A stretch of DNA of 64,000 bases, from positions 46,996,001 to 47,060,000 of the forward strand of contig NW_026262593.1 in the NCBI RefSeq assembly GCF_021869535.1, in the 5' to 3' direction. This document shows positions 11,365 to 30,283 of the stretch, in pieces (position 1 is the first letter of the stretch; every line of letters begins with the position of its first letter). Position numbers and translations under genes: made by a program. Origin of the DNA: Mytilus californianus. Lineage: Eukaryota. The notes beneath the pieces are model-generated. The model was not told the DNA's origin and ran no database searches. It was given only the letters and a program-made list of their open reading frames with translations.

Positions 11365-12797
11365 AACACGCTTGAACGTAAAAAGGTGTACCCGATTTTC
11401 TCTTTTGATAAGATGAATACCCATTTTGGTTATTTTACCCCAAAAACTACATGAAATGTAATTTACTGCTTGAAAAAGATCAAACAGTATAATTCGACAA
11501 TTAGAAGAAAACAGTTGGATTATCACAAATCGGCACTAAAAGAATTCCAATACTGATGGGAGGACTTTGTGTTTCTAGCTCAGATTTTGAATTAAAAATT
11601 AAAGAAAACCAACTAACGAATAATGAATTTATATTTTTTTTCTACCTAATCTGCTGAGTCAAACAAAGTTTTACGAGGGAGTCTTTTTCTTCTATGGGAT
11701 ATCCATCCTATTTGCAGGGTCGCCATATAAAAAATATATGCGTTTATTTTTTAAATATAATTTACCTCGTTAATATAGTTATAAATGTTAAATTAAATTC
11801 ATTTAGTGTATTTTGACATTTTGATACGGTCCCTCTATTTTTTTAGTCAGTGTAGGTGTCGGTGTCGGTATAAGTGTCCGTGTAGATGACTTTTCGAAAA
11901 TGTCTAATAAAATAACATGATAAACGAAGGTGATAAATACTGAAGTGGACCCAGGTTAATATACTAAACCAAAGCCATTATCACCTTATCAAATGTACCG
12001 AGCGCAATTATTATCGATATATATAAACTTTAGGTAGTCAATATATAAATAACACATAGATGAGATGGTAATTTGGAATGTTATTAAATGATATTTTGAC
12101 GAAAATCAGCATACGCAACACTGATGACCGCGCCCGGTTTATATAAATACAGCTTTTCGGCTCAGTCTATTACTGAAAAATACGTATGTTGATGTATAGG
12201 ACTTATTTTTATTCAATTTTTAAATTTAATTGACATGAACAAATGTTTTGTTGTTACCGCAAGAAAAACATTGTCAATCGAGGCGAAGCTGTGTAATAAT
12301 GACTTTTTCAGCAATATTGGTCATAAACGGCATGTTACATCATTGTCCCAGGTTAGGGGACAGTTTATAGCGCTCGCAAACATGTTCAACCCCATCACAT
12401 TTCGTATGTGCCTGTCCGAGGTCAGTAATCTATCATTCAGTGGTTTTCGTTGGCTGATGTCTGTCAAATTCGTTTTTTGTTAATTTATTTGTACATAAAT
12501 CAGGCCTTTGGTTTCTCGTTTAAATTATTTCACATTTTGTCATGTCGGACCTTTTATATCTTACTATACGGTATGGGTTTTGCTCATTGTTGAACGCCGT
12601 ACGGTGACTGACCTTCAATAGTTAAGATTAGAATCGAATGTTACCGCCACGATGAACAGAGGAAAACGACTTATAGTTCTTTAAAATTAATTATGAAACA
12701 ACGTATTCCCCTATGATTTTATTATTAATTATATTCTTATACTACAGATAAAATCAATAATTCAAACATCAATACAGGGAATACAAAATTTTGAACA

Positions 12798-12917
12798 TCA
12801 GTTACATGGCTCAATAAGTCGCCATTTACATTCCTGGCCAGCATCTCTTTCACACACAGCGTTGGCTTTGTAACAGTCGTTAACAAGACGTCGGTCACAT
12901 TTCTTAAAACCAGTGTT
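12798..12917 (-). CDS. TIMP-like protein, last coding exon (C-terminal Cys-rich subdomain)
   Basis: Acceptor CCAG at 12919-12918, phase 0. NTGFKKCDRRLVNDCYKANAVCERDAGQECKWRLIEPCN then TGA. The A-x-C...C-x-W pattern matches the TIMP C-terminus. Confidence 0.75.
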   Translation of the reverse strand, partial: NTGFKKCDRRLVNDCYKANAVCERDAGQECKWRLIEPCN

Positions 12918-13009
12918 CTGGTGTAGATAACAGCAATATGAAAAATATAAATACATAAATGTTAAAATCAATAATAAGTATTAAATGAACTAATCATAGA
13001 GAAGCACCT

Positions 13010-13200
13010 TAAAATTTGGACGCAGGACGCGCGTTTCGTCTACAAAAGACTCATCAGTGACGCTCGAATAAAAAAGATAATAAAAGGCCAAGTAAAGTAC
13101 GAAGTTGAAGAGCACTGAGGACCAAAAATTCCGATAGGTTTTGCCAAAAACAGCTAAGGTAATATCTATCCCTGGGGGTAGAAACCTTAACTTCATCTGC
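13010..13200 (-). mobile_element. Short repeat ending in a minimal type I hammerhead ribozyme motif (Penelope pLTR/retrozyme-like)
   Basis: Minus strand reads GAGCGTCA-CTGATGA(13057-13051)-GTC-TTTTGTA-GAC-GAAA(13037-13034)-C-GCGC-GTC-CTGCGT. The catalytic core, 3-bp stem II and palindromic loop III are intact; stem I is partly mismatched. Confidence 0.75.
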
Positions 13201-14276
13201 TATTATATAATACACATGTACACATGTCTGTCATATTTTATTTCGGTAATCGTGCATCACCACAACCATATGTACTGCAGTCGTCCGGTCGAAATATATA
13301 ATCAATAGGCAAATTATTTAGAATTGTTTGTTTCAATCTGAAATTGATAGCCAAGAATGAAGAATTTAATTGAAATTGAAAATCAAATACAAATTATTCA
13401 TTTAAATAGCCCTTTAAATATATCCTTTTTGTAATCAAATTAATAATATAATAACCTGTAATAAGCATTTGTCTTCTTTTTATCTTGGCTTTGGGTTAAA
13501 CAAAGTTAAGGGCTCTGAAGCATGTAAAAGGACGTATCTGTAGTGTATTAAAAATTCGTTGAACCAGTATTTGAAGTCACCTCCACATTATAAAGAGTAC
13601 AGTATTCTCTGCTTCCGATAATTATTTCAGGCTTGCAATGACAGAACTCAAAGCCGTAGTATGTGGATGCAACTTGGGAATATTTTGTTAAAAAAAATAC
13701 AGATGAGCTCACTATAATATCAACGTGAATCAAAGAAGAGATATCGTTTCATATGCCAGTTGATTTTAGTGCAGGGAAAAATTGTCCGGTGGAACAATTC
13801 TATATTTTTATATGGTTCATTTAAAAACGACATTTGTGCTTCTCATATGTCTATGGACATAAACAACGAAATGAGTTATTCCAAAATGTCTTTAAAGATT
13901 TGAAAAAGAGGCGGAAGATACCAATGGGACATTCAAAACTTATAAGTCGAGCTAAACTAACAATGCCATGGCAAAAACACGAAAGTGCATCGATACTGGT
14001 GTGAGTTTAATGAAATATATAATGAATGAAAGCATGAATATCAAAAAGTCATTAAAAATAGTAAATATAAGCCAAAATTATCAAAGAAAAATTTTCCTGA
14101 GTGAGTTACAACCTCCATTTCAGTACAACTACAACAGGAAAGATAAAAATAGGAAAAGTAGTTATCTCCTGTGCCGTTTTCAACCGACTCGCAATGTCAG
14201 CTTATAGATGCAAGCTAAGGTAGATGTATCAGACCTTTTTGTATTTGTAATTCATATTACTTCAAGTTCAATAGAA

Positions 14277-17200
14277 ACTAGACTTGTAATTGCGAGCAAT
14301 AACGGATGGCACCCTCGTTCTCCCATTGCCAGGGTAACGGCAGTCATTTTGAAATTCCAAAGTCAAAGAGTGCATCTACACATGCAAATTATCATTTTTG
14401 TAAAGTTTCATTTAGTTTGGAGCATTTTGAAATTTTTGACATTTTTGCTGTTTCCATGGTTACGGCAGCCTTTTTGAAAATTCCAACTTCAAAATGCAAC
14501 TCTGCCCATGCCAGTTACTATTTCTGTAAAGTTTCATCCTTTTGATTTTTTTTGCTGCATCCATGGTTACAGTGGATAATTCCAAAATTCTAAAAGCAGA
14601 CATCTCATTGCCACATGTCATGTTATATATCAGTACAGTTTCATTGACTTTGGTGAAATACTCTTTAAGAAAATGCTGATTTTATGCATTTTCCCATAGG
14701 ATCAATGTAAAACTTGCCCCCAGTTTCCATGACAACGGCGGCCATTTTGGAGTATCCAAATATTGTCTTAACATCTTGGCATACTGGGTAACATTTTCAT
14801 AAAGTTTCATCCAGTTGGGTTTTATAACGGAAGAGTTAGAATTTTTGATATTTTAGCTGTTTCCATGGTAACGGCAGCCATTTTGAAAATTCCAAAGTCA
14901 AACTGCAAATCAGCACATGCCAGTTAACATTCCTGTGGAGTTTTTTCCAGTTTGGAACACTTTGATTTTTTTCGCATTTTTGCTGTTTCCATGGAAACGG
15001 CGGCCATCTTTTACCATTCCATAGCAAGGTGCACAACTTTACATGGGGGTCTTCATTATAGTAGAGTTCCATCAACATTGGTTCATTGGATTCCAAGAAC
15101 TCGCTTGGACAAAATGTGTGGAGAAAAATAATAAAAACTAGAATTGCAATTGCAAGCAATAGCGGATGTCACCCTTCCCCCATTGCCACTAAGCGGCAGC
15201 CAATTCAAAATTTTAAACAGTGGTTGCACATATATGCATTGCTATACACCTTTCTGCAAATTTTCAGTACATTAAAGGCTTTTTCAATTTTTCTCATTTT
15301 TGATGTTTCCATGGCAACGGCGGCCATTTTGGAAATTCCAAAGTGGAGAGTCTCATCTTTACTTGCCAGTTCACATTTATATTAAGTTTCATTAAATTTG
15401 GAGCATTTTTTGAAATTTTTGAAAGTTTTGCTGTTTCCATGGTAACGCTTATTAATTCCAAAATTCCAGAGACATATGCCACACTGACTGATGACATGTT
15501 ACATATGATTGCAGTTTCATTTGGTTTAATCTTATATTCTTTAAGAAAATGCACCTTTAATATGTTTTCCCGTAGGGTCAATGTTAAACTTTTGCCAAGT
15601 TTCCATGGCAATGGCAGCCATTTTGGAATTTCTAAATATAGTCGGTGCTTCCACACATACCAGGCAACATTTCCATAAAGTTTCATTTGGTTTGGTCTAA
15701 AAGAATTGGCTTTTTGAAATTTTTTCACATTGTTGCAGTTTCCATGGAAACGGTGGCCATTTAAAAAATTCCAAATGTGTCCTGCATAACTAGAGTTGGT
15801 GGTCCTCATTATGGTACCCACTCATTATGATTGGTCCACTAATCTATGAGAAAACTCTAGGACAAAAAGGTGGAATAATAATAATAATAACTAGATTTGT
15901 AATTGCTAGCAATAACGGATGGCACCCTTCCCCCTTTGCCAGGTGAGCGGCAGCCATTTTGAAAATTCCAAAGTCAAAGAGCGCATCTACAGATGTCTAT
16001 TAACATTGTTGTAAATTTCATCAATTTTGGAGCATTTTGAAATTTTTGAATTTTTTTGCTATTTCCATGGTAACGGGTACAATTTCCGAAATTCCAAAAA
16101 ACAGGTGCCACTTTGGGATATGCCATGTTACATATCCATTAAGTTCTAGAAGGTTTGATCTAACATTCTTGCAGGAAATGCAGCTTCAATGTGTTTTCCC
16201 ATAGGGTCAATGTTAAACTTTCGCCCTGTTTCCATGACAATGGCGGTCATTTTGGAATTTCCTAATATTGTCACAACATCTAGGCATACTAAGGAACATT
16301 ACCATAAAGTTTTATCCAGCTAGGTCTTATAATGAAAGATTTAGAATTTTGAAATTTTTTCACTGTTTTGCAGTTTCCATGGAAACGGTGGCCATATTAA
16401 AAAATTCCAGAGTCAGATGCACAACTTCACATGGGGGTCCTCATTATAGTAGAGTTCCATTAACATTGTATCACTCAATTCTGAAATGTGTGGAAGAATA
16501 ATAAAAATAGTAAGAAAAAAAAGAAACGTAGAATAACAATATGTCACCCCAACTCCGTTGAGGGTGCCATAATAATAAAGAAACGGAGGAAAAGCAATAT
16601 GTCACCCGACATTGTCGTACGGGTGACATAACTAGATTTGCAATTGCAAGCAATAGCGATTGGCACCCTTCTTCCCCCGTTGCCAGGTGAGTGGCAGCCA
16701 TTTAGAAAATTCCAAAGTCAAAGAGGGCATCTACACATGCAAATTATCCTTTTTGTAAATTTTCATTAAGTTTGGAGCATTTTGAAATTTTTGACATTTT
16801 TGCTGTTTCCATGGTTACGGCCGCCATTTTGAAAATTCCAACTTCAAAATGCAACTCTGCCCATGCCAGTTACCATTTCTATAAAGTTTCATCCCGTTTG
16901 CAGCTTTTTTATTTTTTTTAGAAATTTTGGACATTTTTGCTGCATCCATGGTTACAGTGGATAATTCCAAAATTCTAAAAGCAGACATCTTATTGCCACA
17001 TGTCATGTTATATATCAGTACAGTTTCATTGACTTTGGTGAAATACTCTTTAAGAAAATGCTGATTTTATGCGTTTTTCCATAGGATCAATGTTAAACTT
17101 GCCCCCAGTTTCCATGACAACAGCTGCCATTTTGGAGTATCCAAGTATCGTCTTGGCATTTTGGCATACTAGGTAACATTTCCAGTAAGTTTCATCCAAT

Positions 17201-18590
17201 TGAGTCTTATAATGAAAGATTTAGCATTTTTCACAATTTAACTGTTTCCATGGTAACGGCAGCCATTTTGAAAATTCCAAGTTCAAAATGCAGCTCAGGC
17301 CATGCCAGTTACTATTTTAGTGAAGTTTCGTACAGTTTGGAACACTTTGAATATTTTCGGATTTTTGCTGTTTCCATGGAAACGGCAGCCATCTTGACCA
17401 TTCCAAAGTCAGGTGCACAACTTCACATGCTGGTCTACATTATGGTATAGTTCCATCAACATTGGTCCATTAAATTCTAAGAACTTGCGTGGACAAAATG
17501 TGTGGAAGAAGATTTAGGAAAAAAAGAATCGTAGAATAACAATACGTCACCCCAACTCCGTTGAGGGTGCCATAACTAGATTTGCAATTGCAAGCAATAG
17601 CGGATGGCACCCTTCCCCCGTTGCCAGGTGAGTGGCAGTCATTTAGAAAATTCCAAAGTCAAAGAGTGCATCTACACATGCAAATTATCCTTTTTGTAAT
17701 GTTTCATTAAGTTTGGAGCATTTGAAATTTTGGACATTTTTGCTGTTTCCATGGTTACGGCGGCCATTTTGAAAATTCCGACCTCAAAATGCAACCATGC
17801 CTATGCCAGTTACCATTTCTGTAAAGTTTCATCCAGTTTGCAGCATTTTGATTTTTTTTGAAATTTTGGACATTTATGCTGCAGCCATGGTTACAGTGGA
17901 TAATTCCAAAATTCTAAAAGCAGACATCTCATTGCCACATGTCATGTTATATATCAATACAGTTTCATTGACTTTGGTGAAATACTCTTTAAGAAAATGC
18001 TGATTTTATGCATTTTCCCATAGGGTCAATGTTAAACTTGCCCCCAGTTTCCATGACAACGGCGGCCATTTTGGAGTATCCAAATATTGTCTTGACATCT
18101 TGGCATACTGGGTAACATTTTCATTAAGTTTCATCCAGTTGGGTCTTATAACGGAAGAGTTAGAATTTTTGATATTTTAGCTGTTTCCATGGTAACGGCA
18201 GCCATATTGAAAATTCCGAAGTCAAACTGCAAATCAGCACATGCCAGTTACCATTCCTGTGGAGTTTCTTCCAGTTTGGAACACTTTGTTTTTTTGGCAT
18301 TTTTGCTGTTTCAATGGAAACGGCGGCCATTTTTTACCATTCCATAGCAAGATGCACAACTTTACATGGGGGTCCTCATTATAGTAGAGTTCCATCAACA
18401 TTGGTCCATTGGATTCCAAGAACTCGCTTGGACAAAATTTGTGCAAGAAAAATAATAAGAAAAAAAAGAAACGTAGAATAACAGTATGTCACCCCCAACT
18501 CCGTTGAGGGTGCCATAATAATAATAATAAGGGAAAAAAAAGAAACGTAGAATAACAATATGTCACCCCAACTCCGTTGACGGTGCCATT
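14277..18590 (+). mobile_element. Five head-to-tail Helentron-associated (HINE-like) non-autonomous elements with internal subrepeats
   Basis: Unit starts ACTAGA(T/A/C)TTG(C/T)AATTGC at 14277, 15137, 15890, 16631 and 17575. Internal subrepeats carry TTTCCATGGYAACGGCRGCCATTTTG. 3' hairpins CACCCCAAC-TCC-GTTGAGGGTG at about 16545, 17548, 18490 and 18563. Confidence 0.75.
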
Positions 18591-19618
18591 ATCACCAAAG
18601 AATGATTTTATTCAATGAGAAGATATCAACTATATAGCGGAATGTAAAAAGGGATAATGCTAGCCTCTTTTCTTTTATTTCTTGACAAGTCCCAAGCCTG
18701 TGCTATGTCTGCCTCACACGAATGAAATAAAAGGTAAACAAGAAGTTGAACACAATAGGTTTCCATATAAGAATGCCGGTCGTAACAAAAATAGTCTATC
18801 AAATAACCAAGCATCTTAAAATAAGTTTTGGGGAATTTTTCAAAGAATCAGATTGGTTTTTACAATATGCATGTAATCTTCTCCTAAAACAAGTCAGAAC
18901 TTGGCAGTTATGTAAAACCAATTAATATTTTTTATGAAAAACTGTTTGTTTTCATGATTAATTGGAAAAATTGTAATGCCTGTAGAAGTCAAATGTTTGT
19001 TTATATTATTGCATGAGAAACGTTTAAAAAAAGAGGCGGACGATACCATACCGAAGAGAGACTAACACAGTCATGGCAAAACAAAATTAACGAAGAGAGC
19101 GAGACAAACACCAGTATACAAAACACTACATAAATATAATAAAGACTGAGTAACACGCGTATGTCCCTCACATAAAACCGGGTGATATCAGGTGCTCCGG
19201 AAGAGTAAGCATAACCTGCTCCATATGCGACACTCGTCGTGATGAAGACTGACATTGATTATTTGTACTACACAATGTATATCAATATTGTGTTTTACGG
19301 TATGTGTTGTAAACATCATTCTATAACCAGCACATCCGATCCTGATATCCAAAATTGATTGGATGTTTTGTAAAAAAAAGGTGGGAGAAGATAAAAAGAA
19401 GACCATATGAAACCAATAAAAACAGACAATGTCATGTTCAAAAAGTACATCAACGAAAAGGCAAAGACAGCCACTAAACGTTTAGCAACAATAACCTCAC
19501 CAAAAAAACACAGTGTGTGAGCTCAGTAGAGCTCCGGAAGGGTCAGTAGTTCCTGCTCCACTAGTGACTTTGTTGTAGTGTCTATTTTATGTCACCAAGT
19601 TTAATATATGCTACTTAC

Positions 19619-19743
19619 AAATCCCCCGCATCCATCACAATCGTAAAGGCCACGGAAACCACGTTTCTGTGTTTCTGTGAAGGTATTAAATGGTGCAATC
19701 CAGTCAATACTAGTTAATTCCTGTGGCTCACCAGGGACTCGTC
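19619..19743 (-). CDS. TIMP-like protein, coding exon 5
   Basis: Acceptor TACAG at 19745-19744 (phase 1), donor GTAAGT at 19618 (phase 0). RVPGEPQELTSIDWIAPFNTFTETQKRGFRGLYDCDGCGGF resembles the TIMP segment ITLCDxIxPWxxLSxxQK...Y..GC.C. Confidence 0.8.
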
Positions 19744-19905
19744 CTGTAGAAATGATATGTTATCAAAGTTACTATTTAGTCTTTCTTGTTTAGGCACCGA
19801 CCATTCGTATTTTGTAGGGGTCATATTTGTTTCAATAATAAACAGGAACAAAATATATTTTGTAAACTCAGTTTGGAATGTAAAGTTTTTCTGCTAATTT
19901 CCAAG

Positions 19906-20219
19906 ACGAGGGTTGAGATCTCAAAAAAACATGTTTAACCCCGCCGCATGTTTGCGCCTGTCCCAAGTCAGGAGCCTCTGGCCTTTGTCAGTCTTGTATC
20001 ATTTTTAATTTTAGTTTCTTGTGTATAATTAGGAGTTTAGTATGACGTCCATTATCACTGAACTAGTATACATATTTGTTTTTGGGCCAGCTGAAGGACG
20101 CCTCCGGGTGCGGGAGTTTCTCGCTGCATTGAAGACCCATTGGTGGCCTTCGGCTGTTGTCTGCTCTATGGTCGGGTTGTTGTCTCTTTGACACATTCCC
20201 CATTTCCATTCTCAATTTT
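19906..20219 (+). repeat. Young interspersed repeat, longer copy
   Basis: The 3' about 210 bp are nearly identical to 5433-5647. Confidence 0.8.
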
Positions 20220-21322
20220 AAACATACAATTTTTCCCTTCCTTTCATGATTTTTTTTATTAGTTGTTACTGGCTTTGAAATAGCTGTCAGTAACTGCGAG
20301 TACTCTCAGTTCTGTACTTAGTGTCTTTTTTGTTGTGGGTCTGTGTTTTTGTTACTTGTTTTTCTGCTTTGTATCGATCTGATGAGTTAAGCCCTTTTTA
20401 ACTGATTTTTATAGTTTGTTGTTCATATGTTGTGCTGTTACACCACTGTCCCAGGTTACGGGGAGAATTAGGCGCCCGCAAACCTGTTTAACCCCGCCAC
20501 ATTCTGAATATGCCAGTCATGGCCTAAGTCAGGAGTCTATAATTCAGTGGTTGTCGTTGGTTCATGTCTGTCATATTTGTTTTTCGTTCATTGTTTTTTT
20601 TTATGAATTAGGCCTTAGTTTCCTCAATGGAACTGTTTCACATTTTTCATGTCTGAGCCTTTTATAACCGACTATATTGTATGGGTTTTTCTCATGAAGG
20701 CCGTACGGTTGACTGTTATTGCTTACATCCACTTCATTTGAACTTGGGTGAATAGTTTTTTCATTGGCCATCATACCACATCTCCTTATTTTAATTTTTG
20801 TATAAGTACCGATAGGATGTAGGACCTAAGTGTTCATTTCTGTTTAGGAATGAATATATAGTTATAATTCAATTGATCAATAAAAAAATCAATGCTAGAA
20901 CCGATAATTATACACCTTCAAAAAATGGAGACAGATATTTGATTGGCTGATGTGAAATTACCAGAACGGAAAAAAGAACGGAAAGTTGTTCGATCGTTGT
21001 AGACACGGGGTTTGTATTTTTATCAGATTGAGAAAAATCGCGACAGTATGCGTTTGATTCTTGCCATCAGCTTGTAAATATATAATTTATAAATAGATAA
21101 AATCAGAGATAAATTTGAATATTAAATACAACATAATAATATTTAAACTGAATTTTGACAATTCTTACTGTAATAACTAATCCTCTTTTAAAATATAGGA
21201 AAATTAACATTACGTTTTTTAAAATCCATTATAACTTAATTTTATGCTTAAAAAATTTGCACCATGGTCAACAAGGAGAGACAGATATGAGTTATCACAT
21301 AAATGAACACAATAACGCTTAC

Positions 21323-21464
21323 CATATACAGTGAAAATGTAGTAGTCAACATGATTTTCCAGGTCAACGGTGCACTTGACTTTTTTGTAATTTGTCCAAA
21401 ATGTTACCAAAGCACCAGGGACAACATCCGTATAATTGGCAAAGATGGTCACTTCCTTTGGTCT
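21323..21464 (-). CDS. TIMP-like protein, coding exon 4
   Basis: Acceptor TTACAG at 21466-21465 (phase 0), donor G|GTAAGC at 21322 (phase 1). RPKEVTIFANYTDVVPGALVTFWTNYKKVKCTVDLENHVDYYIFTVY aligns by eye to TIMP IYT...CGVxL....YLI. Confidence 0.8.
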
Positions 21465-22140
21465 CTGTAAGATATTAAGGGTCTACTAATGATAATTCAG
21501 TACAATTCACCTTTTTTTCCCAGAATGCGGCAAGATCCCAGATATAATTCATTTTTGCATATTTAACGTGTAGTGGCAAATATTTCATACGATTTCAGGA
21601 CGAGAACAAATTATGATCAATCAAAACAACAAGTAAAAAAATTGGACTGTCAATGGAAAATGAGGGCATGTTGATAAGAGGCAGAAATGTTCCTGACGTC
21701 AGGACACCTACGGATTCCCAATAAATATTTAAACCACTGTTCTTTAATTGCAGAAAGAATTTTACTATCTCCATACGACGTCCACAGCCTATTTTTCCTA
21801 TCTGTGAATGACCAATTACCTTTGATGACTATGGTGTTAAAAACTGTTTTCAGTTTCCCTTCGGCTTATGAGTTTTGAATGTCCCCTTGGTTATGTTTAA
21901 TTTATAGACCTTAACAAATGTTTTAGAGATAATCCCTTTCCTTAATTTGTTTGTTTAAAAAATATTGTTTTGCTAGGTAATCAACAAAAAAACCTGCAGT
22001 TTTCTAATATATTTTATACGGACTTACCATTTATGTTTCATTTATAATGTTAATGTACCAGAGTCTGACTATTCTTCGAAGTTTTGTCCACATTTTTTAC
22101 ATTTTTTTGTTTTGATAACTTATCGATTCGTTTAAATTAC

Positions 22141-22223
22141 CTTGAAAACTTCATTTATGCGAATGTCATACATCTTTTTGTTGTCTTGTGTAAGGTTACT
22201 ACTCTGGACAGTTCCCCTGAAAA
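22141..22223 (-). CDS. TIMP-like protein, coding exon 3
   Basis: Acceptor TTGCAG at 22225-22224 (phase 1), donor GTAATT at 22140 (phase 0). (V)FRGTVQSSNLTQDNKKMYDIRINEVFK matches TIMP VIRAKV...YxIKxxKxFK. Confidence 0.8.
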
Positions 22224-22439
22224 CTGCAATGAAAATCACGATAGATATCTTAGCAAACTAATTAACCTGTACTTAGGACATCTCAGTTTTTTTCTATAAA
22301 ATCGAAATTAATAAGATAATTGATAACTTTTCGTTTAAATAAGAGAATTAAAAAAATCTGTTATTATAGTAATATCTATAATTTACCGTAGTCTTTTTAG
22401 AAGTATTGATATCTGTAGTCAGGGTTTGTGTTATTAAAA

Positions 22440-22720
22440 AAAAGATAATGTTGGATGTAACACGTCTTCTGATTGGCTAAAAGTTTTTATCTGTCAGCTC
22501 ATAGACATAATAGTTTTGTCATGTGACCGTGACGTCATCAACATTTTTTCATGATTTACTCCTTACAAATGGAACTTAGAATTAAATTATAAGGAATGAC
22601 CTAAAATATGTGGTGCACACTTTTTAATAACCCGTTACGCGGGTTATTCAGTGTGCACCACATTTTTGATGTTATTTCTTGATAGACAGTAAATTTTTTA
22701 CAGTCATTCCTTAAAGAATT
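22440..22720. mobile_element. MITE-like repeat remnant containing a TGACGTCA palindrome
   Basis: Internal inverted repeats (TGTGGTGCACAC / GTGTGCACCACA, ATAACCCG / CGGGTTAT). Boundaries approximate. Confidence 0.4.
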
Positions 22721-22770
22721 TGTTCTGTATCTTCTTCCTGTTATTTTTACCATGCATACAAATTACGTAC

Positions 22771-22918
22771 CTAGATTATTTAATCCACAGAACTCAAACT
22801 GTGGTATAAATAGATCATCCATCCAATCGGAGACTGAACAGGATTTGCCATTTGAACAATGTATAAATATATACAAAACCAAAACAATCCCAGAGCATTT
22901 CCTCTTCAAAAATAACTC
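22771..22918 (-). CDS. TIMP-like protein, coding exon 2 (signal peptide and N-terminus)
   Basis: Acceptor at 22920-22919 (phase 0), donor G|GTACGT at 22770 (phase 1). ELFLKRKCSGIVLVLYIFIHCSNGKSCSVSDWMDDLFIPQFEFCGLNNL gives a hydrophobic signal then C...PQxxFC as in TIMP CxC...PQxxFC. Confidence 0.8.
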
Positions 22919-23490
22919 CTTTAAAATATGGACAAAATAAAATATACAATGAACATCGCTATCGTTTCCCGTTCTATTGTCGGACTGCAGGCGTCAGGGT
23001 ATTCAATTTTCAAAGGGAAAGAAATATTAAATTATCTTATCCTTAATGTACAATTAAGAAGTCATTGTCCACGTTCGTGCAATTCCGTCGAAACAAGATC
23101 GTACAATTTCGTTGACTAATTATATAATACTAAAATACTAAAATTGTCGAGCTGATTCTTAATACTATCTCAGAAAAGTTGAATATTCTTCATTGGTAGA
23201 AATCTATAATGACGATAAATGTTCTTGCTTTCCTCTGGTCATGCTATTGTGACGTCACGAAAAAGGCAACCATGCCTGATAACGTCTCACAGAAAGAATC
23301 TTAAGTTTTTGCAGATCATTGAGAAAAAAAATAAATATTAAGTTTAGTTTGCCATCGTCTAAAACCACTCGTCTTAAGACATCAACAGATTCTGCCAATG
23401 TACGATATTTCTTCTTTCAAGATAGGCAAACTTTTAAATTACTATAAAACACGACGTTATAAAAGTTATACGCGTAACAAAAGGTCTTAC

Positions 23491-23493
23491 CAT
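23491..23493 (-). CDS. TIMP-like protein, probable ATG-only first coding exon
   Basis: ACAATG|GTAAGA on the minus strand is phase 0 and supplies the Met missing from exon 2. Confidence 0.55.
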
Positions 23494-23809
23494 TGTATTA
23501 TTATCAAATTATCACAAGAAGTAGTCCCTTACTTTTAAATTTATAATATTTGGGTAGTTGACATAAAAAAGAACATGTCAGGAAGGATGTTTGCGCCCAT
23601 TACATCAAACGGATATCCACAGGATAAATTACATACATGTACAGTAACTGTTGATAACTCGCTTTAATATATTAACAACACTCATTATGATTTTTTTAAT
23701 AGAAATTTTTAAATGGCCTGTGTTTTACACCATTAATAAAATATTTTTCAGATTGAAAGTAATGATCTTTATAAAAATTCGGACAGAGAGTCATTATCTC
23801 CTTCTGCAC

Positions 23810-28444: not shown

Positions 28445-28560
28445 CAAGACAATCAACTGTTTTATCCATGATGTTCCATTTGTAGTGGTTCCATTTTGGT
28501 GAGCAGTCCGGAAGGTCTGTTGTTACTTGACCGTAGCAGTCATCATGTTGTTGACAGCAT
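28445..28560 (-). CDS. Secreted phospholipase A2, coding exon 4 (catalytic His-Asp)
   Basis: Acceptor TTTAG at 28562-28561 (phase 2), donor G|GTACGT at 28444 (phase 1). CCQQHDDCYGQVTTDLPDCSPKWNHYKWNIMDKTVDCL contains the CCxxHDxCY signature. Confidence 0.95.
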
Positions 28561-29281
28561 CTAAAACAGTGTTATCGTCAGAGTTTTATTGCGTTTACAT
28601 TTCTTAAGGTTTTGTCTAATGAAGGAACATTTTGTAACGTTCAAGTATGGTGAAAAACTGTAAAATAATCAATTATCAAACATAAAACATGTCCGTTTTT
28701 ATTTTAGATTTCTACCACCGGTAACGTAGGTGCAATATGTAAAATAGAGCTGTTAGCTTTTAAGAGCACATGCCGTTCTAACCTATTCATCTACTGGTAT
28801 CATTGACAGGTTGTGTTGTTTAAGTACTTAATTTTACTCTTATTGTTCTGATTTAGTGAACCAATACGAAGAAAATATATTGAATCATTATATAAATATT
28901 GCAATTAAGCAACCTATGAATACCAAACTAAATAAGATATAGTTTACTCTAAGAATTGTGTAGATTGAATGATTTCCGTCGTCTATATTCTAAAAGGTAG
29001 TCATAATTACTATACGAATCAAATTTATACACGTCTTAACAAATGTTTGTTACGACTTATTTAAATACGTTATGTATTTGCTCATAAAATGTTGAATAGG
29101 TGGTTGGTTTTTTAAATTTGTCTGCAATTATCTTGATAAAAATTTAATTTCAATATAGTCAAAAACCGTAAACCATACTAAAATTAGTTAAATGTATCTG
29201 ATGTTAAATGTTTGAAATTGGCATTTCCAATAAAAAAAAATTAATTTCATCTACCGGTATTTATAAGAAACTAATCTTAAT

Positions 29282-30118: not shown

Positions 30119-30144
30119 ATCTTTATTCATTATTCTCTCCTCAC

Positions 30145-30283
30145 CTGTCATCTTTATCCACAGGGGTTCCACTACCTCCCCATCCACAGTAACATCCATA
30201 TCCATTGAAGTTGAGTGGATCTCTTCCTGTGGTATCTACTATCATCTCGGCTAGCTGGAACAAATCTCGTTTCACTCTCAGCC
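30145..30283 (-). CDS. Secreted phospholipase A2, coding exon 3 (propeptide, N-terminal helix, Ca2+-binding loop)
   Basis: Acceptor TTTCAG at 30285-30284 (phase 1), donor AG|GTGAGG at 30144 (phase 2). [45 protein letters not shown](R), with the YGCYCGxGG loop. Confidence 0.95.

What the first reader, a model, noticed from the sequence alone, without database searches (positions are those of the whole stretch)
12798..23493. Hidden six-exon gene for a highly divergent TIMP-like secreted protein
Seen: join(23491-23493, 22771-22918, 22141-22223, 21323-21464, 19619-19743, 12798-12917) on the minus strand is phase-consistent with canonical GT-AG sites. It gives a 206-aa ORF: MELFLKRKCSGIVLVLYIFIHCSNGKSCSVSDWMDDLFIPQFEFCGLNNLVFRGTVQSSNLTQDNKKMYDIRINEVFKRPKEVTIFANYTDVVPGALVTFWTNYKKVKCTVDLENHVDYYIFTVYGRVPGEPQELTSIDWIAPFNTFTETQKRGFRGLYDCDGCGGFNTGFKKCDRRLVNDCYKANAVCERDAGQECKWRLIEPCN. 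Only one exon appears in the ORF track. Signal peptide, PQxxFC, VFRGxV, YxIxIxxVFK, CxVxL, TQKRG..Y.C..C and AxC...CxW follow the TIMP/NTR fold in order. Established: TIMP families are expanded in bivalves and occur in shell and byssal matrices. Inference: a lineage-specific, possibly unannotated paralogue.
Basis: partly seen in the sequence, partly recalled or inferred. Interest (0 to 1): 0.75.

Follow-up and report, generated by a model that had tools for sequence, protein, structure and literature searches.

The report
Divergent mussel TIMP-family gene, already annotated
The six-exon gene is real, transcribed and conserved in Mytilus mussels, and it encodes a very divergent secreted relative of the TIMP protease inhibitors. 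It is not hidden, because RefSeq already holds the identical protein as "uncharacterized", and its inhibitory tip is altered, so its function is open.

Summary
All five introns are GT..AG and the frame is open for 206 codons. RNA reads and two transcript contigs show three junctions exactly as predicted. The other two junctions have indirect support.

The window is Mytilus californianus. It is absent from the published M. californianus TIMP census (PMC10755359, Table S9).

TIMP ancestry is well supported:
- Pfam TIMP scores 32.7 bits, above the 23.1 cut-off (E 8e-8).
- hhalign against canonical Mytilus TIMPs gives probability 98.5%, E 1.8e-15.
- All four internal introns have the same positions and phases as in a canonical TIMP gene of the same genome.
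- The AlphaFold model matches TIMP-1/2 and NTR modules.

dN/dS is 0.14-0.17 across three Mytilus species. The gene is single-copy and was found only in Mytilus.

Two defining TIMP features fail. Cys-x-Cys after the signal peptide is replaced by Lys-Ser-Cys-Ser-Val plus an insert of about 7 residues. The EF-loop cysteine is also gone, leaving 10 cysteines instead of 12.

I read it as a remodelled, probably non-canonical TIMP-fold secreted protein: a new member of a known kind, of moderate interest.

The parts
23491..23541 (-). Exon 1: 5' UTR (at least 48 nt seen in a transcript contig) plus the ATG at 23491-23493, followed by the donor GTAAGA
   Evidence: One search shows the donor GT. In one search the X1 contig has 51 nt upstream of exon 2, and its depth of 5.85 in bin 23471-23650 equals 20.7 x 51/180. 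Searches show the upstream 37-48 nt 85-92% conserved and ATG|GTAAG kept in M. trossulus and M. galloprovincialis. The 5' end itself is not mapped.
22771..22918 (-). Exon 2: signal peptide, the altered N-terminal segment (Lys26-Ser-Cys28-Ser-Val plus insert) and the Cys13 equivalent (Cys45). It ends in phase 1.
   Evidence: joint 22223|22771; residues 2-50 of P0004.
22141..22223 (-). Exon 3: strand A, the hypervariable AB-loop region and strand B, ending after the invariant Phe-Lys (phase 0)
   Evidence: residues 52-78. One search shows that 6 of 12 positions in residues 55-66 vary among species.
21323..21464 (-). Exon 4: core strands of the OB barrel with the Cys70/72 equivalent (Cys109) and a conserved N-x-T sequon at Asn88
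   Evidence: residues 79-125.
19619..19743 (-). Exon 5: EF-loop region lacking the usual cysteine, the most TIMP-like motif, and Cys161/Cys164
   Evidence: Pfam TIMP E 0.013 for this exon alone; all 13 PDB sequence hits are TIMP-1/2; residues 127-167.
12918..19618 (-). Intron 5, 6.7 kb and rich in repeats. The same intron is 0.48 kb in M. galloprovincialis.
   Evidence: One search shows repeat-like depth at 17700-18700 and 19093-19291.
12798..12917 (-). Exon 6, coding part: compact C-terminal domain with five of its six cysteines, and the stop TGA at 12798-12800
   Evidence: residues 168-206. In one search the contigs X1 and X5 run 176 and 143 nt beyond exon 5. One search finds the orthologous exon with an AG acceptor.
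12718..12797 (-). 3' UTR with a candidate AATAAA at 12718-12723
   Evidence: Read directly. The X1 contig covers about 56 nt of it. The poly(A) site is not verified.

Best explanation
This is the Mytilus californianus gene LOC127720201. It is a real, spliced and transcribed single-copy gene, so far found only in Mytilus. It encodes a 206-residue protein with an N-terminal signal peptide followed by a two-domain TIMP fold: an NTR/OB-barrel N-domain and a small cysteine-knotted C-domain. It descends from the bivalve TIMP family but has diverged very far. The edge that canonical TIMPs push into a metalloproteinase active site has been rebuilt. Cys1-x-Cys3 is replaced by Lys-Ser-Cys-Ser-Val, about 7 residues are inserted before the Pro-Gln...Cys13 motif, and the EF-loop cysteine that normally tethers the N-terminal segment is lost. 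That leaves 10 cysteines, enough for 5 disulfides. The rebuilt N-terminal segment is the best-conserved part of the protein, and the neighbouring AB loop is the most variable. Shown here: the gene, its transcript, its homology, its fold class and purifying selection. Inferred: it is secreted and still acts through that edge as a binding protein. I think it more likely than not (about 55-60%) that it no longer inhibits matrix metalloproteinases by the canonical route, in which the free alpha-amino group of an N-terminal cysteine chelates zinc. It would then have another partner or a matrix role, as described for atypical bivalve TIMPs.
For: Gene and transcript: canonical splice sites and an open frame; three junctions in raw stranded RNA reads and in contigs from two further studies. 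Identity to XP_052082635.1. Homology: Pfam TIMP 32.7 bits against a cut-off of 23.1, E 8.3e-8, residues 40-193 on profile positions 10-163. hhalign of the orthologue profile against canonical Mytilus TIMPs gives probability 98.5%, E 1.8e-15, over 174 columns covering both domains. Language-model neighbours are all TIMP clusters, top score 0.95. Intron positions and phases (1, 0, 1, 0) are the same as in the canonical TIMP gene on contig C99 of the same genome. Fold: the AlphaFold2 model has pLDDT 65.5, with the core at 85-93. Foldseek's best hits are TIMP-1 at E 1.9e-6. VIA-align gives Z 10.6 to TIMP-2 and Z 10.3 over residues 37-204 of 1br9. Selection: dN/dS is 0.14-0.17 in three species pairs with no stops. 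Altered edge: alignments, and cysteine positions. Only 2 of 29 positions vary in residues 26-54, against 6 of 12 in residues 55-66. [quoted passage not shown] A bivalve TIMP without inhibitory activity is documented (PMC5975577).
Against: No signal-peptide predictor was available. Cleavage after Ser27 would leave Cys28 as the first residue, and a Cys-Ser start as in TIMP-2, so canonical zinc chelation is not excluded. The N-terminal 38 residues of the model are below pLDDT 50, so the geometry of the new edge is unknown. The structure model used canonical TIMPs in its alignment, so it is not fully independent of the sequence evidence. In the M. edulis reference locus exon 3 cannot be found and the RefSeq models are truncated, so the gene may be dispensable in some haplotypes. 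Tissue of expression is unknown and read depth is low.
Confidence: 0.6

Rival explanations
1. It is still a working metalloproteinase inhibitor of the canonical type. Signal peptidase cuts between Ser27 and Cys28, and the free Cys28 amine and carbonyl chelate the catalytic zinc. Ser29 enters the S1' pocket, and the wedge is held by the single Cys28-Cys109 bridge.
For: Gly-Lys-Ser|Cys obeys the -3/-1 rule (read from the sequence). Cys-Ser is the start of TIMP-2 (PMC3779175). Parsimony favours loss of one whole disulfide (Cys3 with the EF-loop Cys), which would make Cys28 the Cys1 equivalent, and its partner Cys109 is kept. The N-terminal segment is strongly conserved.
Against: hhalign and MAFFT both align Gly25 with the -1 residue of canonical cleavage sites and Lys26 with Cys1. 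Cleavage after Gly25 gives a more typical 5-residue c-region, which is my judgement and was not computed. The distance from the Cys to the Pro-Gln motif is 5-7 residues longer than in any TIMP aligned. The tether to the EF loop is missing.
Confidence: 0.3
2. It is a decaying or dispensable gene: transcribed and annotated but without a maintained function.
For: It sits on a very long branch. It is absent outside Mytilus in two database searches. Exon 3 is undetectable, and only truncated models exist, in the M. edulis reference. RNA depth is low.
Against: dN/dS is 0.14-0.17 with dS of 0.27-0.42 and intact frames in M. californianus, M. trossulus and M. galloprovincialis. All ten mature cysteines and the new N-terminal segment are conserved. 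Splice sites are kept.
Confidence: 0.07
3. It is an NTR-module protein of another lineage (netrin, PCOLCE, sFRP or complement C345C type) that only resembles TIMPs.
For: The highest VIA-align Z scores are to complement C345C domains (Z 11.6, against 10.6 for TIMP-2, which is a tie). There is a weak Pfam NTR hit (E 0.037).
Against: Only TIMPs align through the C-terminal domain. Pfam TIMP passes its cut-off while NTR does not. The intron positions and phases equal those of a canonical TIMP gene. The size and two-domain layout are those of TIMPs.
Confidence: 0.03

Closest known systems
Canonical TIMPs (human TIMP-1 and TIMP-2; PDB 1UEA, 1BR9, 2E2D)
   Same: Signal peptide followed by about 180 residues. 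OB-barrel N-domain plus a small six-cysteine C-domain. Collinear motifs: Pro-Gln..Phe-Cys, Val-x-Arg-Gly/Ala, Tyr-x-Ile, Phe-Lys, and Gln-Lys/Arg-Arg-Gly..Tyr..Cys-x-x-Cys. Fold match E 1.9e-6 and Z about 10.
   Different: About 20% identity. There is no Cys-x-Cys at the mature start, the N-terminal segment carries an insert of 5-7 residues, and the EF-loop cysteine (Cys99/101) is absent. That gives 10 cysteines, not 12. There is an extra 7-9 residue insert with an N-glycosylation sequon around residues 83-92, and the C-domain loops are shorter.
Canonical Mytilus TIMPs, e.g. 'metalloproteinase inhibitor 2-like' of M. californianus (P0009, gene on contig C99)
   Same: Same genome. The four internal intron positions and phases are the same. 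There are 174 alignable columns at 29% identity, and the Arg-Gly-Leu-Tyr-Asp-Cys block is shared.
   Different: The canonical genes keep Cys-Ser-Cys-Phe-Pro-x-His and the Leu-Cys of the EF loop, and several sit in arrays on other contigs. This gene is a singleton on C13, with its ATG on a separate exon and a branch of 2.7 changes per site.
Scallop byssal protein Sbp8-1, an atypical TIMP (PMC5975577)
   Same: A bivalve TIMP-family protein with a non-canonical cysteine pattern. The authors found no metalloproteinase inhibition and proposed a structural (cross-linker) role.
   Different: Sbp8-1 has two extra free cysteines in the C-terminal region. This protein has two fewer cysteines and an even number. 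No byssal or foot expression has been shown here.
'Pseudo TIMPs' of the molluscan TIMP census (PMC10755359)
   Same: Proteins that match TIMP signatures but lack a good NTR-domain match, said to have undergone N-terminal structural change. Here Pfam NTR is below its threshold while Pfam TIMP passes.
   Different: That class is defined by the SMART NTR model, which I could not run. This accession is not in their Table S9 under any class.

Membership tests
TIMP (Pfam PF00965, homologous family) | Sequence matches the family profile above the curated cut-off over most of its length | tested here: met
   P0004, which is identical to the window's exon translations, scores 32.7 bits against a cut-off of 23.1 (E 8.3e-8), residues 40-193 on profile positions 10-163 of 183. 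Orthologues score 27-29.5 bits. hhalign against canonical Mytilus TIMPs gives probability 98.5%.
TIMP | Two-domain fold: N-terminal OB/NTR barrel plus a small C-terminal domain | tested here: met
   AlphaFold2 model with pLDDT 65.5 and pTM 0.65. Foldseek's top hits are TIMP-1 and TIMP-2 with probability 1.00. VIA-align gives Z 10.6 to 2e2d_C and Z 10.3 over residues 37-204 to 1br9. Caveat: the input alignment contained canonical TIMPs, and the C-domain is at pLDDT 44-64.
TIMP | Gene structure: intron positions and phases shared with TIMP genes | tested here: met
   This gene: phase 1 in the Val codon before Phe-Arg-Gly, phase 0 after Phe-Lys, phase 1 in the Gly codon before Arg, and phase 0 three residues after Cys-x-x-Cys. 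The canonical C99 gene: phase 1 in the Val codon before Ile-Arg-Gly, phase 0 after Phe-Lys, phase 1 in the Gly codon before Arg, and phase 0 one residue after Cys-x-Cys. Five main coding exons are the molluscan norm (PMC10755359).
TIMP | Cleavable signal peptide | tested here: inconclusive
   A charged n-region and a 10-residue hydrophobic core are visible, and the region aligns with the signal peptides of canonical TIMPs. No predictor was available, and the cleavage site (after Gly25 or after Ser27) is unresolved.
TIMP (functional inhibitor) | Cys-x-Cys at the very start of the mature protein, with Cys1 chelating the catalytic zinc | tested here: not met
   Every canonical sequence aligned has Cys-Ser/Thr-Cys directly after the signal peptide. 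This protein has Lys26-Ser27-Cys28-Ser29-Val30. Only one of the two cysteines is present.
TIMP | Twelve conserved cysteines forming six disulfides | tested here: not met
   There are ten cysteines after the signal peptide: 28, 45, 109, 161, 164, 174, 182, 189, 197 and 205. The EF-loop Cys is replaced by Ser-Ile here and by Arg-Arg in the other species. The C-domain keeps all six.
TIMP (functional inhibitor) | Tight 1:1 inhibition of metzincin proteinases | not testable with these tools
   Needs recombinant protein and enzyme assays.
NTR module (Pfam PF01759) | Match to the NTR profile above its cut-off | tested here: not met
   14.3 bits against a cut-off of 21.9, E 0.037. The structural similarity to C345C/NTR domains is clear nonetheless (Z up to 11.6).

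The most novel reading that the evidence does not exclude
A Mytilus-only offshoot of the TIMP family replaced the zinc-chelating Cys-x-Cys wedge and its EF-loop tether with a new, strongly conserved Lys-Ser-Cys start and an acidic-aromatic insert. That would turn the TIMP scaffold into an inhibitor or ligand with a different target, either a non-MMP protease or a matrix or immune partner. The fast-evolving AB loop would then act as a specificity exosite.
Probability: 0.3. Interest if true: 0.5.

Novelty: new member of a known kind. Interest (0 to 1): 0.3.

Why it matters
Pteriomorph bivalves have the largest TIMP repertoires known, used in immunity, shell and byssus. How the scaffold is re-used when the inhibitory tip changes is poorly understood. 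This gene gives a clean case: it is single-copy, under purifying selection, and has a precisely defined change (one disulfide and the Cys-x-Cys start lost, a conserved insert gained). It was missed by name-based annotation and by the published census of the same genome, so TIMP counts in mussels are lower bounds. Practically, it deserves a family name in the annotation and a simple inhibition test. It is not a new kind of system.

Tried and rejected
- Exon-by-exon family scans were nearly blind. Only exon 5 gave Pfam TIMP (E 0.013) and TIMP-only PDB hits at E about 0.3. Exons 2, 3, 4 and 6 gave nothing relevant.
- A Pfam TIMP scan of the whole genome in six frames listed 28 sites, none on this contig. 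The gene is too divergent for that screen.
- Searching the genome with exons 4, 5 and 6 found only the gene itself, so there are no close paralogues.
- The full-database search with exon 5 found one real cluster and one spurious bacterial repeat protein (P0002), which I rejected as a low-complexity match.
- The word search with the full protein found only the Mytilus cluster.
- Canonical TIMPs were reached only after adding canonical exon fragments to the query. Those E-values are circular and are not used as evidence of homology. The independent test is.
- The first AlphaFold run, with five near-identical sequences, failed (pLDDT 37).
- A phmmer search of the full protein against PDB sequences was inconclusive. 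The top hit was an unrelated aminotransferase at E 0.07, with TIMP-2 at E 0.85.
- A chance ORF was rejected on the RNA, conservation and homology evidence.
All whole-protein steps used the database protein P0004.


Full report
**Observation**

Their phases fit, and they add up to 621 nt.

The reading frame of exon 2 is closed upstream, with no in-frame ATG before the acceptor. The start codon therefore has to be spliced in.

**Transcription**

I laid one RNA run kept as raw reads (X21) and three sets of Logan contigs on 17700-23650.

- The joints 19743|21323, 21464|22141 and 22223|22771 are present with GT..AG ends on the minus strand.
- X21 shows them in 21, 12 and 10 reads. All have the first mate on the plus strand, which fits a stranded library reading a minus-strand RNA.
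- The same three joints occur in one contig each of X1 (724 nt) and X5 (578 nt), which come from two other studies.
- The X1 contig carries 51 nt upstream of exon 2. Its depth in the bin 23471-23650 (5.85) is what 51 nt of a contig at depth 20.7 would give, and the bins in between hold only exon 2.
- X1 and X5 continue 176 and 143 nt beyond exon 5, which fits a 120-nt exon 6 plus some 3' UTR.

They are supported by the items below.

**Identity of the gene**

I searched exon by exon by reference.

The full-database search with exon 5 alone returned a 207-residue Mytilus trossulus protein, 90% identical over that exon. Its 90% cluster holds six sequences:

- M. trossulus XP_063409316.1.
- M. galloprovincialis XP_076086311.1.
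- M. californianus XP_052082635.1, "uncharacterized protein LOC127720201", 206 residues (P0004).
- Two truncated M. edulis models.
- A fused phospholipase-A2 model from M. galloprovincialis.

The five exon peptides of the window occur without a mismatch at residues 2-50, 52-78, 79-125, 127-167 and 168-206 of P0004. Residues 51 and 126 are the split codons.

From here on P0004 served as the referenced whole protein.

The gene is therefore not hidden. It is unnamed, however, and neither its protein nor its gene accession occurs in any supplementary table of the published TIMP census that used this very genome. Table S9 of that paper was stored complete (PMC10755359).

**Homology**

Single exons are almost uninformative. 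Exon 5 alone gives Pfam TIMP at E 0.013, and its 13 PDB sequence hits are all TIMP-1/2 at E about 0.3. The other exons give nothing.

The whole protein behaves differently:

- It passes the Pfam TIMP gathering score (32.7 against 23.1 bits, E 8.3e-8) in one collinear stretch, residues 40-193 on profile positions 10-163. Pfam NTR stays below its threshold.
- Language-model neighbours are TIMP clusters (top score 0.95).
- A profile of the Mytilus orthologues alone, compared with a profile of eight canonical Mytilus TIMPs, gives hhalign probability 98.5%, E 1.8e-15, over 174 columns spanning both domains.

The E-values are not evidence, because those queries contained canonical fragments.

Gene structure gives an independent line. 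In the canonical TIMP gene on contig C99 of the same genome, the internal introns lie as follows:

- In the Val codon before Ile-Arg-Gly, phase 1.
- After Phe-Lys, phase 0.
- In the Gly codon before Arg, phase 1.
- One residue after Cys-x-Cys, phase 0.

In this gene they lie in the Val codon before Phe-Arg-Gly (phase 1), after Phe-Lys (phase 0), in the Gly codon before Arg (phase 1), and three residues after Cys-x-x-Cys (phase 0).

**Fold**

A first AlphaFold2 run with five near-identical sequences failed (pLDDT 37).

With 18 sequences, including canonical mollusc and vertebrate TIMPs, the model reached pLDDT 65.5 and pTM 0.65. The barrel core is at 85-93, while residues 1-38 and parts of the C-domain are below 50.

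- Foldseek ranks TIMP-1 first (E 1.9e-6). TIMP-2 and NTR modules of complement C3/C4/C5 and PCOLCE follow.
- VIA-align gives Z 11.6 to C3 C345C, Z 10.6 to TIMP-2 (114 residues, 3.1 Å), and Z 10.3 over residues 37-204 of free TIMP-2. Only TIMPs align into the C-domain.

The caveat is that the alignment guided the model.

**Conservation**

The orthologous exons lie in the same order in M. trossulus and M. galloprovincialis, with AG and GT kept. The ATG|GTAAG first exon is also kept.

- Nei-Gojobori dN/dS is 0.17, 0.17 and 0.14 for the three pairs, with dS of 0.27-0.42 and no stops.
- The gene is single-copy in this genome.
- No relative outside Mytilus was found by the exon-5 full scan or by the word search. 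The sensitivity of both is limited.
- In a tree with canonical TIMPs the clade sits on a branch of 2.7 changes per site, with no supported sister.
- In the M. edulis reference locus exons 1, 2, 4, 5 and 6 are present, but exon 3 cannot be found. This explains the truncated models and suggests a broken or variant haplotype.

**What differs from a TIMP**

Every canonical sequence aligned has small residue | Cys-Ser/Thr-Cys-x-Pro-x-His-Pro/Ser-Gln-x-x-Phe/Tyr-Cys. Here the corresponding stretch is Gly25-Lys-Ser-Cys28-Ser-Val, then an insert rich in Asp, Trp, Met, Leu and Phe, then Pro-Gln-Phe-Glu-Phe-Cys45.

MAFFT and hhalign put Lys26 on Cys1 and Cys28 on Cys3, with a 7-residue insert. Counting from Pro-Gln against TIMP-2, the segment is 5 residues longer if Cys28 is taken as Cys1.

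The EF-loop cysteine (Cys99 in TIMP-1, Cys101 in TIMP-2), present in all canonical sequences, is Ser-Ile here and Arg-Arg in the other three species.

The mature protein has ten cysteines. The likely pairs are:

- 28-109, the Cys1-Cys70 type.
- 45-161, the Cys13-Cys124 type.
- Three pairs in the C-domain, whose six cysteines are all kept.

Among the four full-length sequences, from three species, only 2 of 29 positions vary in residues 26-54. That compares with 6 of 12 in the AB-loop region and 9 of 25 in the signal peptide.

**Mechanism**

In solved complexes the TIMP ridge is the N-terminal segment, disulfide-linked to the C-connector and to the EF loop. The amine and carbonyl of the N-terminal Cys1 bind the catalytic zinc. 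Residues 1-5 fill the primed subsites, and the AB loop makes variable exosite contacts (PMC3779175).

Here one tether is gone, the segment is longer, and the first residue depends on the cleavage site. Both Gly25|Lys26 and Ser27|Cys28 satisfy the -3/-1 rule. The alignment to canonical cleavage sites, and a 5-residue c-region, favour Gly25|Lys26. That is my judgement and was not computed.

If the mature protein starts with Lys-Ser, canonical chelation is not possible. From my own knowledge, not checked here, N-terminally extended or blocked TIMPs lose MMP inhibition.

I therefore lean (55-60%) towards a secreted TIMP-fold protein that binds through a rebuilt edge and is not a canonical MMP inhibitor. 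I give about 30% to a still-functional inhibitor starting at Cys28, and a small remainder to a dispensable gene.

A scallop byssal TIMP without inhibitory activity (PMC5975577) and the "pseudo TIMPs" with N-terminal changes (PMC10755359) show that such departures are an established theme in bivalves.

**Verdict**

The gene is a new, unnamed member of a known and much-expanded family, with a well-defined loss of two defining features. Interest is moderate to low (0.3).

Noticed in passing
window 28446-28562 and 30144-30245, minus strand: Two exons of a secreted-type phospholipase A2 gene lie just upstream on the same strand (92-97% identical to the PLA2 part of M. galloprovincialis VDH92522.1). 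That database entry is a fused PLA2 plus TIMP-like model. The order PLA2 / TIMP-like / NIT-guanylate cyclase is also seen in M. edulis (L036).
   Followed up: partly
L036 (M. edulis, GCA_963676685.2), between 11246 and 14020; also 16656-16725: Exon 3 of the orthologue cannot be found in the M. edulis reference locus, although exons 1, 2, 4, 5 and 6 are there. The RefSeq models are truncated to 83 and 130 residues. A 70-nt partial copy of exon 6 lies just upstream of the real exon 6. This could be a disabled or variant haplotype.
   Followed up: partly
window 12918-19618; L033 7647-8129; L032 5521-79926: Intron sizes differ enormously between species. Intron 5 is 6.7 kb here and 0.48 kb in M. 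galloprovincialis. Intron 4 is 1.6 kb here and about 74 kb in the M. trossulus assembly.
   Followed up: no
window 19889-20883 (intron 4), also 19093-19291 and 22277-22873: These stretches have very high depth in all RNA and contig runs on both strands, so they are repeats. One odd joint, 20220 to 19103 ('goes back 1118' with 34-36 extra letters), is seen in 192 reads of X21 and in contigs of X1 and X5. It probably reflects a different arrangement of a repeat family elsewhere in the genome.
   Followed up: no
G000 contig C154 at 41.36-41.65 Mb and 88.05-88.13 Mb (loci L005, L006, L010-L012, L018, L023): Canonical TIMP first exons occur in arrays. The 41 Mb copies read Lys-Asp-Cys-Ser-Cys after the hydrophobic core, so some canonical-looking paralogues may also carry a two-residue extension before Cys1, depending on the cleavage site.
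   Followed up: no
L034 (G000 C99:60599000-60608999), minus strand: The RefSeq model of the canonical TIMP gene on C99 (P0009) has an extra 28-codon first exon ahead of the Met-Met that starts the signal peptide. This may be an alternative or over-extended 5' end.
   Followed up: no
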